Source: Styela clava
Lineage: Eukaryota
Direction of reading: 5' to 3'
NCBI RefSeq assembly: GCF_964204865.1
Contig: NC_135263.1
Coordinates: 7,068,001 to 7,132,000, forward strand
Length of the DNA: 64,000 bases
Below, one piece after another: positions 1 to 6,300 of this stretch. The notes under the pieces are model-generated. The model was not told where the DNA came from, did no database searches, and saw nothing but the letters and a program-made list of their open reading frames with translations. Each line of letters starts with the position of its first letter. The first letter of the stretch is position 1. The position numbers and the translations under genes are program-made.

Positions 1-3000
1 CTTTCACACTCGTTTATATCTATGATAAAAAATGATTCAAATGAAAAAATAGATAAAATCTCATTGTTATCAACACATAGAAAAGCGATAAAAAGGGGAC
101 AGCAACTATAGCTCCCCGGTTTAACATTTATGGAACAACTTGTATGAGATATATGTTCTCAGACATCCTTAGACAAAGTTTGAAATAGGTCTAAATGCCA
201 TTCGGCCCGTTTAGACGCTATTGGGCTGCATTTCACCTGGCCGAGGGCGTAAGAAAAGTGGTATCCTATAATAAACTCATACTAAACGGCCATTCAAAAC
301 TTAGTAGGCCTTCCACCACTGATTAGTTGCTTGTATACGTTATGCATGAAACATTCCACAAAACAAAAAATATCGCTTAGTTTCGTACCTGTTTGGCAGT
401 TCGTTCCGGTGTAGCCAGGCTGACATTCACACTGGTATTCTGTAGAACTTAAATGATTACATGTTCCACCATTCTGACAGGGCTCCGAGGCACATGGAGT
501 TATCACTGAATGATAATAATAGAATTAAAAATTTGTGTTATTATTTCAAATTTTTATTAGCGTTCGTTTTATCCATCTACTTTACAGTAAATATTGCTTA
601 TCTTCGTGCACATGCAGCTGTCTATGAGCAATAGAGACTACCCATCTATTGGGTTGATTTAACAATCGTGTATCTAAAGCAAGAGAATTTATCTAACAAT
701 TTATTTAGCGTGCAAGATTTAAAATGGCATAAATTAACTGAAACTTTGTAAAGTTGAGATATAGAATTTAGACGGTTTATCACAGGAAAATACGCGCGCT
801 TCCATTTCGGCTATTGTCGTTAACTTGTAATGCTGTTGAAGTTTCATGGACCTTTAAATGCATTAGTCTTGTGTCCGGTGACAAATCCACACTCACGATT
901 CTGAATGATATGCCGTTGACTATAAATATAACTACATTTATAGAGATATTTATACATTTATGTTTTTTTACACAAATAGATACAACAGGTCATCATCACC
1001 AGTATATCTCATCATCATTAGTGAACATATCTTATTGATATTTTTTCTAGCGGCAATTTCTAATCAGTATTTCGACTATTCGAAATAATAATCACGAAAA
1101 AAGATCGCTAGATTGCTCAGAACAGCTGGTTGCAAAGATGATATATGATTTTATGTCGTATACATAAAATTGGCTTTCTACATAAAAACGGGAAAGAATC
1201 CATAAAATGTTTGTGATTCTTTTGTAAAATTTTTAATTTTTACTGAAACACAGTGGCGTAGCTAGAGGCTGGTTTTGCGGGTCGCCCCCCCCCCCCCCTT
1301 TTGAAATGTAAAAAAAAAATCATCTTTCCGTATCGGTCGGACCTGATAGCTGTTTCGATCAAACTTAGCAAATAAAAATTTCAGAACCCCCCTTTGAAAA
1401 TTTCTGGCTACGCTCCTGCTGAAACACACACAACATTTGAACACTCACGGACAACTACGTATAACTTGCTTCATTTGAAAAATAAATAAAACAGGTTAAA
1501 TTCGGAACATCAATTCATATCTACTCCTGCCCACCCTTGAATGTAAGAGAAAATCCAGTAGATGTCGTTTTGTTTACACTGGTTTTTAACACAATTTCAA
1601 ACGGTCCATAACCAGAGGTTCGTTTTGCATTTCCTGCCCCGAACCCGCACATTTTATATCGCCCTCCCTTTCCAGAGGTCCCATGATAGACTAAACCAAT
1701 ATAATCTTCAGAACACTGTGAGGATTCTGATATGTTCAAATAGGAAAACTGCACCTATTTAAAGACGAGAATATATGTGGTCAACAATAAATATTTTTGA
1801 TAGTTAAAGGTACAATAACGTGATTTGGACATTGTTCGTTTTCCGAAATAATATTCTATTATATTATGAACCTTTGCTTTAATGTTAAGTATGACTTAGT
1901 TTATAAGCTAACTCGCTACCATGAGGTGACATTGGGTGACTATGTGCACATGAAAAGCAAAAGGCGACCATGCACTAATACAATCTAAATACTGAAATGC
2001 ATCGATCAGTATGAAAAGCAAGACATGCTCTTCTTCATGCTATAGGAACCTTTATATTTGGCACTGAAACCTATTCCGGTGATGGTTTGATCTGACGACA
2101 ATGTAATATTTAAAGGGGTAGATCCGGATAAAGGATTGACTCCATCATCCACAGATGAACCGCAAAATCTTCTTGCTGTTTCTCCAGCAAATGTAAATGA
2201 CATATAGTCGTATTGACAATTCTGTGAATTCTCAATACCAATCCTCTCGATTATGACCTGATAGGGATAATGATTAAATATATCGCCTATTTTGGAAAAT
2301 ATATAACTGCTTCTTGGTGCATTGTATTATCGGTGTTTAAAACTGATTTGTAAGTTTTTGGTGGCCAATTGTCCGGAGACCACCAGTCGTAAGGCTTGAA
2401 TTATATTATAGAATTACGATTTAATGTCATCACTTAATGGTTCTTTTCATTTTATACTTATTTGATTTATATCGCTATATTTTGACACTTTATTAATTTC
2501 TTCTTTTGCTGAGATATAATATTTAAAGTCGCTATAATTTCAATATACTAACAACAATTAATCTATATAAAGACATACCTCAACCATCATGTTTCTTGAT
2601 GTTTTGACAGTCCATAGACAGAGCAAGTTATTTTCGTAATTGTTTGGATAGCCAGGAGATGTTATCCGCCCCTCTAAAGCCGCTGTTGCTCCACCGCATT
2701 CCGAATAAACCGGAAGACTTGATCCTGTATTTTCCTGCGCTAATCCTGCATAAAATGGATGTATTGTTAACAAGTTGTTTGGTAAACCAAACATTTTTAT
2801 AATTTTCAAGACTTCGTCCCTAATGTAACAATGGTTTATATCCTTATGCTATACTTAAACAACGACTTGTTTTGGTAAAACTTCGACCTAGATTAATGTG
2901 TCTGAGCTGAATCCATAATCATTTTCTGCTGACATCGACAAATTAATTTCAAATTTTCTTGACTTGTATATAAAAGTTACAATTTCCTAATCGTAATAAA

Positions 3001-3307
3001 ATAAAGAATTTAAGTAGGCGTGAGTTATAGCAATTTAGTAATACTAACAATCTTATACATGATCATTCGAACATACATTTTGTTCAAACGTTCATTGCCA
3101 AAGATGTCCTCAATTTCAAATCCGAATGACTATTACATATTTTTATTGGTATCACTTCATATCTAGATTTAGACAAATGTAAATAAGCTGACACAAATTA
3201 TCTTATTGATCAGCATTACTTATTTCTATATCTTACACTGAATATGCCTTATACTGACCTATTGTAATTAAGAAACTGGTGAAGAGGCATGCGTACCATC
3301 CGCTCAT
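1..3307 (-). CDS. Secreted CUB-domain + EGF-repeat protein (fibropellin/cubilin-like architecture), 3' incomplete. Exons (-): 3307-3259, 2745-2579, [2257-2050 OR 1754-1535], possibly 1464-1449 and 900-794, 505-389, 19-<1
   Basis: Exon 1 MSGWYACLFTSFLITI joins GLAQ to give a signal peptide. The next exon is a CUB N-half (CGG...GRITSPGYPNNYENNLLCLWTV). Two CUB C-half exons follow (CQYDYM...RFCGS...GFSAKY and CSEDYI...KMCG...GFSLTF). Then EGF (PCASEPCQNGGTC...YQCECQPGYTGTNCQ) and the start of a Ca-binding EGF (DINECES) at the window edge. All boundaries are GT-AG with compatible phases. Confidence 0.9.
1251..1418. mobile_element. 168-bp non-autonomous hAT-type MITE in an intron of the CUB-EGF gene
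   Basis: Imperfect TIRs CAGTGGCGTAGCTAG / CTGGCTACGCTCCTG, with a perfect 8-bp target-site duplication CTGAAACA (1243-1250 and 1419-1426). A related end occurs at about 41407-41455. Confidence 0.85.
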
Positions 3308-6300
3308 CGTCAGATTATATCCACTTTTTCTGATTAATTGCACTTATTCCTCTAACTCATCCAAGCAAAACAACTTGAATAAACTGGTACTTGTATATGT
3401 ACTTTAAACTAAGATTCAAAATTTATTGTAGTAGAATTACAACAAGAAAATGAATTAAACAAAGTTCCGCATTTGCATGTTCACGTTCCCAAACAGGCAA
3501 ACCACTGATCATCAACCGCACCTTTATTCCAGCACAAGATTAGATTCCTACAACTGATGCAACTCCACATATTATTTTATTCTGAACCATAGTTTAGTAA
3601 TTCTGAACTAGCTAATTTTCGAGTGTATCTGTATCTAAACATTTCAGATTGATCGGAGGGTATTTTTAGCCACAAGTGTTATATAACCACGAGAAAAACA
3701 CAACTTGGACTTTATACTAAAACATAGTTAAGACTGACAATAGCAACTACTTCAATATTGAGTTTAAATTGTTACAATAGATATCAATTGAAAAAGATTG
3801 ATGCTACTATTATTCACCGCAAAGTATACCAAATAATAACAATGGAATCTAGGGGGTGGTGTGATATCATATATATGAGAAAAAAAATTTCGAACTAATG
3901 TTCGTCTTGCCCTGACAACTGTAAATTATTTTGAGCTTTGTAACTAAAAAAATAGAAACAAGATATACTCAACATCGCTTTATGACCTCACAAACATGAA
4001 ACCATAAAACAAATAGCGATTTCTTGATTATGTCTTGCCGTATAAAATATTGCATTAAGTAGGCTCTTTCTACTGTCGTGCACTTGTTTCGTTTCATTAC
4101 TTTTTTAATTTCTGAATTATTAAAAAAAAAAGAAATTACGTTTTCGCTAATATACAAACTTAATTTTGATATCAAAAATACCTATACCTGATAAATCACA
4201 TTAAAATGTATATTTGTTAGCGTAGTCAAGGTGGGTTTTTAAACAAAAATATGACATACTTGAGAAGTTTTATCTAGCCTGTCCCAGAGATAGACTATAT
4301 CACTACTGCTTAAATTATCTAAGTTGAGTCTATGATTTATGGTGATTTTTTCGATGGCAATTTTCCAACGAGGACAATACCTACTCAAATTGACACGGGT
4401 CCGTGTACCCGGATTTCACGGTTTACTATCATAACACGAATTGACCTAATCCGCCACGATAAGGATCATAATATAACCCATATTTTATCTCATATTTCAT
4501 TGGTATAAACCGCGAAGAATTTAATAAACGGGGCTTAAAATAAATTATATGTCCTGCTAACATTGCTCAATTTATTTTTAATTTCGAAATTCAAAAATTA
4601 GCGTCGAATCAAGTTTCCTACTATCGAGAAGCAACCGTGTGCAAGTTGCTCAGGTCGTACCGAATCGGATAGGCGATTCTATATTTTTGGAATTATACGC
4701 TATTATCACGAAGTTTGAAATATCGAATATTGTTGCAATTCATTATGCAATTATTTGTGAAAAAATTTAACCTCCACCCGAAATGAGCTTATGAATCAGT
4801 TATTATCAGCAAGTAATATTAACTTGAACAGAATCGTCCGGCTAAGTTCGTACAACAAAAATAACATAAATCATATTGTATATACGACGGATTTTTGAAA
4901 CACAATAGTTGCTCAAGGCAATATCTTTCTATTGAAACCAGCGGGAATTTCCCTCAAATTCCTTCCTATAATTAATCTGATCTGAAAACTTTTAATATAA
5001 TTAATCAGCTACTGGTCTTTCTATCTAATCTAACGTGTTGACAAGGTAAAACTCAGCACACGTCAATTGGCAACGCATCCACGTCTAAAATACCACTATT
5101 AGAAAAAGGTATCGTAGTAAAAGTATGGTAAGTAAAATTTATTCTACCTATTTTATAACCAAGTCCCATTTCTCACGCAAAAATCACCACAATAAAATAT
5201 AACTGTTATTTTTTCACACGGGGGTGATAGCGTCATAGTGTACATATGTTTTGAATGATTCTTCAAGTAATTAGATTTGTAATCCACGAATGAATATCAA
5301 CTACACGTAATCATATTTGGCAAAAAAAAGTATTTTGATGCGTTGTCAAAATATTGTTTTTTTGAAACAATTTTAAATTGAAACGCCACAAAAAGGTATA
5401 CAAACAAAAACACGCGGTTGCTTTCAAGTCTGCGTCATGATATATCCAAAAATTATTATTAAAAATCGTTTACAGAATCCAAACTCGGAAATCTTTCATC
5501 TATTTAAACTCCTCTTTCACATTACTCGTATATTCATCTTAATCGGCTCCTTTAAAACTTGTCGTTTTTTCACTTTATCCCTAAAAATAACAACAACACC
5601 GAAAACCCTGTTTACTATTTTATTTCTAGATACGAAAGTACACGAGTTACCACACCGCATTCGTGTTAATTATCCCGTTATTGATGAAGAGTAATTCTCA
5701 TTGATAAAATATGTTTGTTGACGTCGTTGAGAACCACCGCGCACTCGTTACGGTATTTTGTTTACAATATGCCACAGATACTGTTAAGTTGATGAAAAAG
5801 TTAGCGTTAATCGAGCTTGGCGCCTGTAGTTAAAGCAAGTATGTAAATACATGGATCAAGCATATGACGCTTTTCCTTTTGCATTGTTCATACATTGATT
5901 TAATCTACCTTATAATACTATCCCATTTCGGGATTTATTTTGTTACAATTAAATGCATCTAATTTTGCAATATTTTTTTTATAAATTTTATGAATCTGAT
6001 AGGATGATTAATTGAACAGAAAATAAATATGTTTTCAATTATTGTGACTCACAAAAATGACCAGCGCGCGCTCCAAGTACCACTTTAACTAAGTATGATA
6101 GGCCTGTCGATCGGGGCACGGGGGTCAAGAGTAATGAAAAATTTTATTCTGTATGGCAGTGCTAAAATGGGAAATTTCTGATATTGCTGCCATTTTCCTT
6201 TCATGCTGCAAAGTTTATTTAAAACTTGGTTCAATATAATCAAACATAATGAGCTTAATGGTGATCGCAATTGTTTCGCAAATGATCGAAAAAGCAAAAA

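What the first reader, a model, noticed from the sequence alone, without database searches (positions are those of the whole stretch)
1535..2745. One CUB N-half exon followed by two interchangeable CUB C-half exons: candidate mutually exclusive half-domain swapping
Seen: the CUB N-half exon (2745-2579) ends in phase 0. Two homologous C-half exons follow, A (2257-2050, 208 nt: VIIERIGIENSQNCQYDYM...RFCGS...LNITLSSDQTITGIGFSAKYK) and B (1754-1535, 220 nt: VQFSYLNISESSQCSEDYI...KMCGF...FEIVLKTSVNKTTSTGFSLTFK). Both start in phase 0, end in phase 1, are stop-free and keep the two CUB cysteines. No second N-half exon is visible in the 295 nt between them, and joining A to B shifts the frame to a TGA within about 16 codons. 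Established: the CUB Ca2+/ligand-binding acidic residues lie in this half of the fold. Exon A keeps E..C.YDY and SD-like residues, while B has the SD position replaced (KTSVNK) and is more basic. Inference: a secreted protein that switches its CUB binding face by mutually exclusive splicing, with exclusivity enforced by frameshift/NMD.
Basis: partly seen in the sequence, partly recalled or inferred. Interest (0 to 1): 0.8.

Follow-up and report, generated by a model that had tools for sequence, protein, structure and literature searches.

The report
Spare half-domain exon in sea-squirt gene
A sea-squirt membrane-protein gene carries two intact alternative versions of the exon for the second half of its CUB domain, but the only RNA seen skips both, so real swapping between them remains unproven.

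Summary
On the minus strand lie exons 1-5 of Styela clava LOC120341371. RefSeq gives a 692-aa protein: signal peptide, one CUB, five EGF, a membrane helix and a long tail. It is therefore a membrane protein, not a secreted one.

One CUB N-half exon (2745-2579) is followed by two intact C-half exons, A (2257-2050) and B (1754-1535). They are 28% identical and both run phase 0 to phase 1. Only inclusion of exactly one keeps the frame. A plus B gives TGA at the 16th codon. Skipping both gives TGA TAA at once.

RefSeq uses B. A is unannotated, yet it is the more canonical half. It matches 22 solved CUB proteins and keeps all three acidic Ca2+ ligands. B matches none and has lost one ligand. A also has the weakest donor in the gene (gttcct).

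Spliced RNA contigs from two runs join the N-half exon directly to the EGF exon. No RNA run showed A or B.

Mutually exclusive use is therefore possible but unshown. The rival is that A is a silent relic. The same scan flagged other exon-swap candidates in this genome (GRP94, FGFR) on other DNA.

The parts
3259..3393 (-). Exon 1: 5' UTR plus start codon (ATG at 3307) and 16 codons + 1 nt of signal peptide; donor follows 3259. The RNA contig reaches 3393, so the true 5' end may lie further up.
   Evidence: Exact mapping of RefSeq P0151. RNA joint L001 4244/4245>4758/4759 in X1, X2 and X3.
2579..2745 (-). Exon 2: linker plus CUB N-half (two Cys), phase 1 to 0, donor GAG|gtatgt.
   Evidence: Pfam CUB 1-39, E 6.8e-8; P0151 mapping; covered by RNA contigs of X1, X2 and X3.
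2050..2257 (-). Candidate exon A: unannotated, intact, canonical CUB C-half. 208 nt, phase 0 to 1, good acceptor, very weak donor AAG|gttcct. Keeps the E/D/D Ca2+ ligand positions.
   Evidence: Pfam CUB 44-110, 25.1 bits. 22 of 23 PDB hits at E<=1 are CUB proteins. Sits in a 106-codon open frame. Absent from RefSeq protein, RNA contigs and protein database.
1535..1754 (-). Exon B: exon 3 of the RefSeq model. Diverged CUB C-half, 220 nt, phase 0 to 1, donor AGG|gtgggc. The third acidic Ca2+ ligand is replaced by V.
   Evidence: P0151 mapping. Pfam CUB 41-110, 17.0 bits alone, 57.9 bits with the N-half. No CUB hit in PDB at E<=10. No RNA contig depth in X1-X3.
389..505 (-). Exon 4: first EGF domain, phase 1 to 1. 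Read in phase 0, as after double skipping, it begins TGA TAA.
   Evidence: Pfam EGF E 1.3e-10; mapping; RNA joint 505>2579 in X1 and X2; translation.
1..19 (-). Start of exon 5 (EGF 2 and 3). It runs on to 208 bases before the window. The gene ends about 3,689 bases before the window start.
   Evidence: Mapping of P0151 on L006 plus the window; RNA joint L001 1519>1889 in X1 and X2.

Best explanation
The region is the 5' part of Styela clava LOC120341371. This gene encodes a type I membrane protein: signal peptide, one CUB domain, five EGF domains, a membrane helix and a cytoplasmic tail.

A phase-0 intron splits the CUB domain. The N-half exon is followed by two old, homologous C-half exons, each a multiple of three plus one base long. 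The reading frame therefore survives only when exactly one is included. Including both, or neither, gives an early stop and a likely target of nonsense-mediated decay.

My reading is that A and B are both regulated cassette exons with weak donors. They would form an alternative pair built like FGFR IIIb/IIIc. A would give a canonical, Ca2+-site-bearing CUB face. B would give a diverged, basic face lacking one ligand. Double skipping is the default, unproductive state in the RNA sampled so far.

Shown here: the exon anatomy, the frames, RefSeq's use of B, and double skipping in RNA.
Inferred: that A is ever spliced in, that the choice is regulated, that decay removes the out-of-frame forms, and that the two faces bind differently.
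For: - Anatomy and phases are confirmed.
- Exactly-one frame rule: A plus B gives a stop at the 16th codon. Skipping both gives TGA TAA at once.
- A and B are only 28% identical, so the split is old. Yet A still scores above the Pfam cut-off (25.1 against 21.4).
- A matches 22 solved CUB proteins among 23 hits.
- A keeps both Cys and the residues aligned with MASP Glu49, Asp57 and Asp263 (ligand list from passages of PMC5300068).
- A lies in a 106-codon open frame. The chance is about 3e-4 from base composition, and 22 of 7,879 stop-free runs in the window are that long. A long-dead exon should have decayed.
- Neither exon behaves as constitutive. Both are skipped in X1 and X2.
- Both have weaker donors than most of the gene. 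+5 G is present in 9 of 11 model donors. B has 2 and A has 0 of the three consensus features +3 purine, +4 A and +5 G.
- The whole 692-aa frame is intact across 12 exons and 681/692 identical between two RefSeq versions, so the gene is alive.
Against: - No RNA or protein record contains A. RefSeq gives a single product with B.
- Searches for A (58-185 aa range) and for B (40-128 aa range) found no candidate.
- The search with the CUB region of P0113 (380-1211 aa range) found only P0113 itself plus 3 distant proteins among 174 candidates.
- A's donor gttcct is the poorest in the gene.
- RNA contigs of 2 runs skip both exons, and 0 of 3 RNA-like runs laid show any depth on A or B.
- The 3 RNA-like holders carry 0.11, 0.08 and 0.05 of the sampled words. 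The N-half exon alone accounts for 0.116. N-half plus B would be 0.277. So B also lacks direct RNA support here.
- No related species could be examined, so conservation of A and B is untested.
- No convincing competing RNA pairing was seen.
Confidence: 0.4

Rival explanations
1. A is a silent relic and B is the only productive C-half exon. A was left by an old tandem exon duplication, or by a two-CUB ancestor that lost its second N-half exon. It was disabled fairly recently, for example by decay of its donor. The gene then makes one protein, the RefSeq one, plus unproductive double-skipped RNA.
For: RefSeq has one product and it uses B. No record contains A. A's donor gttcct has none of +3 purine, +4 A or +5 G, whereas 9 of 11 model donors have +5 G. 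No RNA depth lies on A. At 28% identity the pair is as far apart as separate CUB domains of one protein. Passages of PMC8373072 say many predicted exclusive-exon clusters that rest on unannotated exons lack support.
Against: A is fully open, in a 106-codon frame, with both Cys, the acidic ligands and a better CUB score than B. That is hard to square with long neutrality. B is equally absent from the RNA seen, so absence from contigs does not single out A. No remnant of a second N-half exon exists in the A-B intron.
Confidence: 0.35
2. Neither exon is used to a meaningful extent. The transcript is mainly the double-skipped, prematurely terminated form. The gene is then decaying, or acts only as RNA or as a 72-aa secreted fragment, and the RefSeq model is a frame-saving prediction.
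For: The only spliced form seen joins 2579 to 505 (X1 and X2). Shares of sampled words in RNA-like runs fit the N-half exon alone.
Against: All 12 coding exons give an uninterrupted 692-aa frame in this assembly. The earlier RefSeq version differs at only 11 of 692 residues with no break. Both C-half exons are intact. Logan contigs drop rare variants, and only two samples of one study show the joint.
Confidence: 0.1
3. Assembly artefact: a second CUB N-half exon between A and B is missing from this assembly. A and B would then be constitutive halves of two successive CUB domains.
For: The phases (A ends in phase 1, B starts in phase 0) would fit an intervening phase 1-to-0 N-half exon.
Against: A DNA-run contig crosses window 1384-2330 with 0 gaps (X4 record 21), though it may come from the assembly's own sample. 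The window has no N. RefSeq joins the single N-half to B. No other close N-half copy exists in the genome; the best non-self match is 43% identical.
Confidence: 0.03

Closest known systems
FGFR2 exons IIIb/IIIc (exons 8 and 9): alternative C-terminal halves of Ig domain III
   Same: A constant exon encodes the first half of a ligand-binding beta-sandwich domain, and two adjacent homologous exons encode alternative second halves. Double-inclusion and double-skip products exist, and the double-inclusion form carries a premature stop open to nonsense-mediated decay (passages of PMC2880598). Here too both non-single forms hit early stops.
   Different: The fold is CUB, not Ig. Use of each exon is proven for FGFR2 but not here. 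The only RNA seen here is the double-skip form. The exon lengths of FGFR2 are recalled, not checked.
Tandem exon duplication-derived mutually exclusive exons in general (e.g. Dscam1 half-Ig exon clusters)
   Same: Adjacent homologous exons of the same phase that replace part of a domain (passages of PMC8373072).
   Different: Those events are defined by transcripts and by conservation of both exons across species. Neither could be shown here. The same paper warns that most duplicated exons become constitutive and that many predicted clusters with unannotated exons lack support.
Ca2+-binding CUB domains of MASP-1/-2/-3, C1r/C1s, cubilin and PCPE-1
   Same: Exon A aligns with them and keeps the residues at MASP-1 Glu49 and Asp57 and at MASP Asp263, the CUB2 equivalent of Asp102 (passages of PMC5300068). 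The CUB-then-EGF order recalls the CUB1-EGF module.
   Different: Here one CUB is followed by five EGF domains, a membrane helix and a long tail, with no protease or CCP modules. Exon B, the annotated one, lacks the third acidic ligand and matches no solved CUB by sequence.

Membership tests
CUB domain (Pfam PF00431) | Profile match above the curated cut-off of 21.4 bits | tested here: met
   N-half 33.3 bits; A 25.1 bits; B alone 17.0 bits, below the cut-off. N-half plus B in P0151 scores 57.9 bits over profile 1-110.
CUB domain (Pfam PF00431) | Four conserved cysteines, two in each half | tested here: met
   Two Cys in the N-half exon and two in each of A and B, read from the peptides. The Cys align between A and B and between A and MASP or PCPE-1. 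That four Cys define the fold is recalled.
Ca2+-binding CUB subtype | Acidic triad equivalent to MASP-1 Glu49, Asp57 and Asp102 | tested here: met
   Met for A: E, D and D align with MASP Glu49, Asp57 and Asp263 (ligand list in PMC5300068 passages). Not met for B: E and D are present, and the third position is V by the A-B alignment. Metal binding itself was not tested.
Mutually exclusive homologous exon pair | Adjacent, homologous exons of the same phase and similar length | tested here: met
   208 and 220 nt, both phase 0 to 1, 295 nt apart, 28% identical, E 8e-6.
Mutually exclusive homologous exon pair | Each exon is found on its own in mature mRNA | tested here: not met
   A appears in no RNA contig, RefSeq protein or database protein. 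B appears only in the RefSeq model. RNA contigs of X1 and X2 contain neither. Contigs drop rare variants, so this is weak negative evidence.
Mutually exclusive homologous exon pair | Joint inclusion or joint skipping is prevented or removed | tested here: inconclusive
   Both forms hit early stops, so decay could remove them. Yet the double-skip form is the one assembled in 2 runs. Decay itself is not testable here.
Mutually exclusive homologous exon pair | Both exons conserved in related species | not testable with these tools
   No orthologue was found in the protein searches. No other ascidian genome is reachable. There is no close paralogue in this genome.

The most novel reading that the evidence does not exclude
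A CUB domain whose ligand-binding half is exchanged by FGFR-style alternative splicing. Exon A would give a canonical Ca2+-site face and exon B a basic face without the full site, in different cells or stages. Double skipping would serve as the default off state of the gene. This would be the first described half-domain swap in a CUB fold. My two paper searches found nothing that describes one.
Probability: 0.3. Interest if true: 0.6.

Novelty: new member of a known kind. Interest (0 to 1): 0.38.

Why it matters
If both exons are used, one gene would offer two different binding faces on a CUB domain. CUB is a common recognition module in complement, development and receptor biology. That would extend the FGFR/Dscam principle of half-domain swapping to another fold, in a close relative of vertebrates.

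The double-skipped, prematurely terminated mRNA as the main visible form would also be a clear case of a gene held off by splicing.

If A proves silent, the locus is an ordinary annotated gene with a well-preserved spare exon. It would then mainly be a caution against inferring exon swapping from sequence alone.

Tried and rejected
- Protein database searches for A and B gave no candidates. These reach only 58-185 aa and 40-128 aa, so longer products are not covered. The region search with P0113 (380-1211 aa) found no A-bearing isoform and no orthologue. Products of 185-380 aa were searched by none of these.
- The exhaustive search with the N-half listed 150 best of 1,663 hits. Only 1 (P0113, 98% identical) is this gene. 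The other 149 are at most 57% identical and mostly multi-CUB proteins, so no orthologue could be named.
- Paralogue searches in the genome for B, A and the N-half found only the locus itself or distant CUB exons. The origin of the pair (tandem exon duplication or loss of a second N-half) stays open.
- The repeat scan for competing RNA pairings gave only short AT-rich matches of chance quality. I rejected these as evidence.
- The AlphaFold2 model of P0151 without an alignment was poor. Mean pLDDT was 38.2 and the CUB region was below 50. Only the helix at 363-400 reached 74-85. It says nothing about the CUB, and I ran no fold search.
- I considered a U12-type donor at A and rejected it by eye. 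gttcct does not fit the recalled consensus, and this was not tested.
- Diversity in the DNA run was too thin to test selection. There were 3 differences across window 1384-2330, one of them a synonymous change in A at 2246.
- Supplements of papers were not opened. Those of PMC8373072 list exon events but are unlikely to bear on this gene.

Full report
**What is there**

Read on the minus strand, the region holds three CUB-coding exons.
- A CUB N-half exon lies at 2745-2579.
- C-half exon A lies at 2257-2050 (208 nt).
- C-half exon B lies at 1754-1535 (220 nt).

Each has an AG acceptor and a GT donor.

Pfam places the three peptides on CUB profile positions 1-39, 44-110 and 41-110. The E-values are 6.8e-8, 2.4e-5 and 0.0079. 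B alone falls below the 21.4-bit cut-off. A and B align at 28% identity, E 8e-6.

tblastn of the exon peptides against the window, and against 20 kb downstream, finds no further CUB half. The 295-nt A-B intron shows nothing like an N-half in any frame.

**Which gene**

An exhaustive search with the N-half peptide listed 150 best of 1,663 hits. Only one was near-identical: P0113, 692 aa, 98% identical.

P0113 is XP_039265795.1, 'uncharacterized protein LOC120341371 [Styela clava]'. Version .2 (P0151) sits on a contig of 20,054,287 bases, the length of the window's contig. The two versions are 681/692 identical.

P0151 maps exactly onto the window and the DNA before it as 12 coding exons. In window coordinates these are:
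- 3307-3259
- 2745-2579
- 1754-1535
- 505-389
- 19 to -208
- seven more exons, down to -3689

Exon 3 of this model is B. A is not in it.

Pfam finds one CUB (residues 33-144, 57.9 bits) and five EGF stretches. Residues 369-393 form the most hydrophobic stretch. They are also the only confident part of a single-sequence AlphaFold2 model, a helix at 363-400 with pLDDT 74-85. The product is thus a type I membrane protein, not a simply secreted one.

**Frames**

The N-half ends in phase 0. A and B both run from phase 0 to phase 1, and the EGF exon starts in phase 1.
- Reading B after A gives TGA at the 16th codon.
- Reading the EGF exon straight after the N-half gives TGA TAA at once.

Only exactly one of A or B keeps the frame. 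This fits an exclusive pair, but it also follows simply from the usual CUB exon phases.

**A against B**

| Feature | A | B |
|---|---|---|
| Solved-structure hits | 23 sequences at E<=1, 22 of them CUB proteins (cubilin, PCPE-1, MASP-1/-2/-3, C1r, C1s, neuropilins, Neto2) | 1 hit at E<=10, not a CUB |
| Ca2+ ligand positions | E and D align with MASP Glu49 and Asp57; the SD motif aligns with Asp263 | E and D present; V at the third position by the A-B alignment |
| Net charge | acidic | basic |

Passages of PMC5300068 name these MASP residues as Ca2+ ligands.

So the unannotated exon is the canonical one, and the annotated exon is the diverged one.

A lies in a 106-codon open frame. The chance of that from base composition is about 3e-4, and 22 of 7,879 stop-free runs in the window are that long.

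**Splice sites**

Among the 11 donors of the model, 9 have +5 G and 9 have a purine at +3. B (gtgggc) has both. A (gttcct) has neither, and no +4 A. A's acceptor is good. No convincing competing RNA pairing was seen.

**RNA**

The run search listed 11 runs.
- 4 runs of one sample hold 0.75-0.89 of the sampled words and look like DNA.
- 3 RNA-like runs hold 0.11, 0.08 and 0.05.
- 4 further RNA-like runs hold 0.00.

The N-half exon alone accounts for 0.116 of the 31-letter words. N-half plus B would give 0.277.

I laid X1, X2, X3 and X4 on L001:1-6000, which is window -1499 to 4500.
- One contig each in X1 (786 nt) and X2 (681 nt) carries GT..AG joints at the model's exon borders for the EGF exons.
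- X1's contig also carries the exon 1-exon 2 joint. X2's 681-nt contig stops at the 5' end of exon 2 in the listed pieces, though the joint table records that joint for X2 as well.
- Both contigs join window 505 directly to 2579, skipping A and B together.
- X3's contig shows only the exon 1-exon 2 joint and ends inside exon 2.
- Depth over A and B is 0 in 3 of 3 RNA-like runs.

The spliced joints show that these runs are RNA. X1 and X2 are two samples of one study.

Contigs drop rare variants, so in-frame forms may exist at lower levels. What can be said is that the main assembled form is the prematurely terminated double skip. Direct RNA support for B is also lacking here.

The DNA-like run crosses the A-B region in one contig with 0 gaps.

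**Databases**

Searches with B, with A's open frame and with the CUB part of P0113 found no A-bearing product and no orthologue. Their length limits leave products of 185-380 aa unsearched. The genome has no close paralogue of any of the three exons.

**Reading**

The long survival of a canonical, open A beside a diverged B points to a regulated alternative pair of the FGFR IIIb/IIIc kind. So do the weak donors of both exons and the fact that neither behaves as constitutive. Double skipping would be the unproductive default. I give this 0.4.

Nearly as likely (0.35) is that A is a silent spare exon with a ruined donor.

Less likely are a gene that makes only the truncated RNA (0.1) and an assembly fault (0.03).

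The origin of the pair is open. It could be a tandem exon duplication or a two-CUB ancestor that lost its second N-half.

**Literature**

- No paper held both 'mutually exclusive exons' and 'CUB domain' (0 papers).
- Of the 24 papers with 'mutually exclusive', 'CUB domain' and 'exon', none of the 15 listed titles describes such an event.
- PMC2880598 (passages) describes FGFR2 exon 8/9 choice with double-inclusion and double-skip products.
- PMC8373072 (passages) cautions that predicted exclusive clusters with unannotated exons often lack support.

**Earlier notes of this scan**

Earlier notes contain nothing on this locus. They list other exon-swap candidates in the same genome (GRP94, FGFR), which I did not test.

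Noticed in passing
window 1246-1421 (intron between exon B and the EGF exon): A short interspersed repeat with a G-run. 69 of the 70 genome matches of window 1-3200 fall in this stretch, at 77-91% identity on many contigs. They often come as two halves (about 1250-1334 and 1333-1418) roughly 160 bases apart. The element also draws very high depth and many broken joints in the DNA run.
   Followed up: partly
about 19,100-19,900 bases before the window start (L005, minus strand): At least three further EGF-like exons of a neighbouring gene, 38-50% identical to the EGF repeats of P0151. No CUB exon was seen beside them.
   Followed up: no
G000:C18:7046175-7046294, plus strand (about 21.8 kb before the window): A weak CUB N-half-like match (45% identity, E 8e-4) with one in-frame TGA. 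It may be a broken or intron-split CUB exon of another gene.
   Followed up: no
2,851-3,022 bases before the window start (exon 11 of the gene, L006): The RefSeq model needs a GC-AG intron here (donor CAG|gcaagt). A walk allowing only GT donors failed, and one allowing GC succeeded.
   Followed up: partly
window 2246 (exon A), 2270 and 2277 (intron): The DNA run X4 differs from the assembly at these three places across window 1384-2330. The one inside exon A is a synonymous third-position change in a Glu codon.
   Followed up: no
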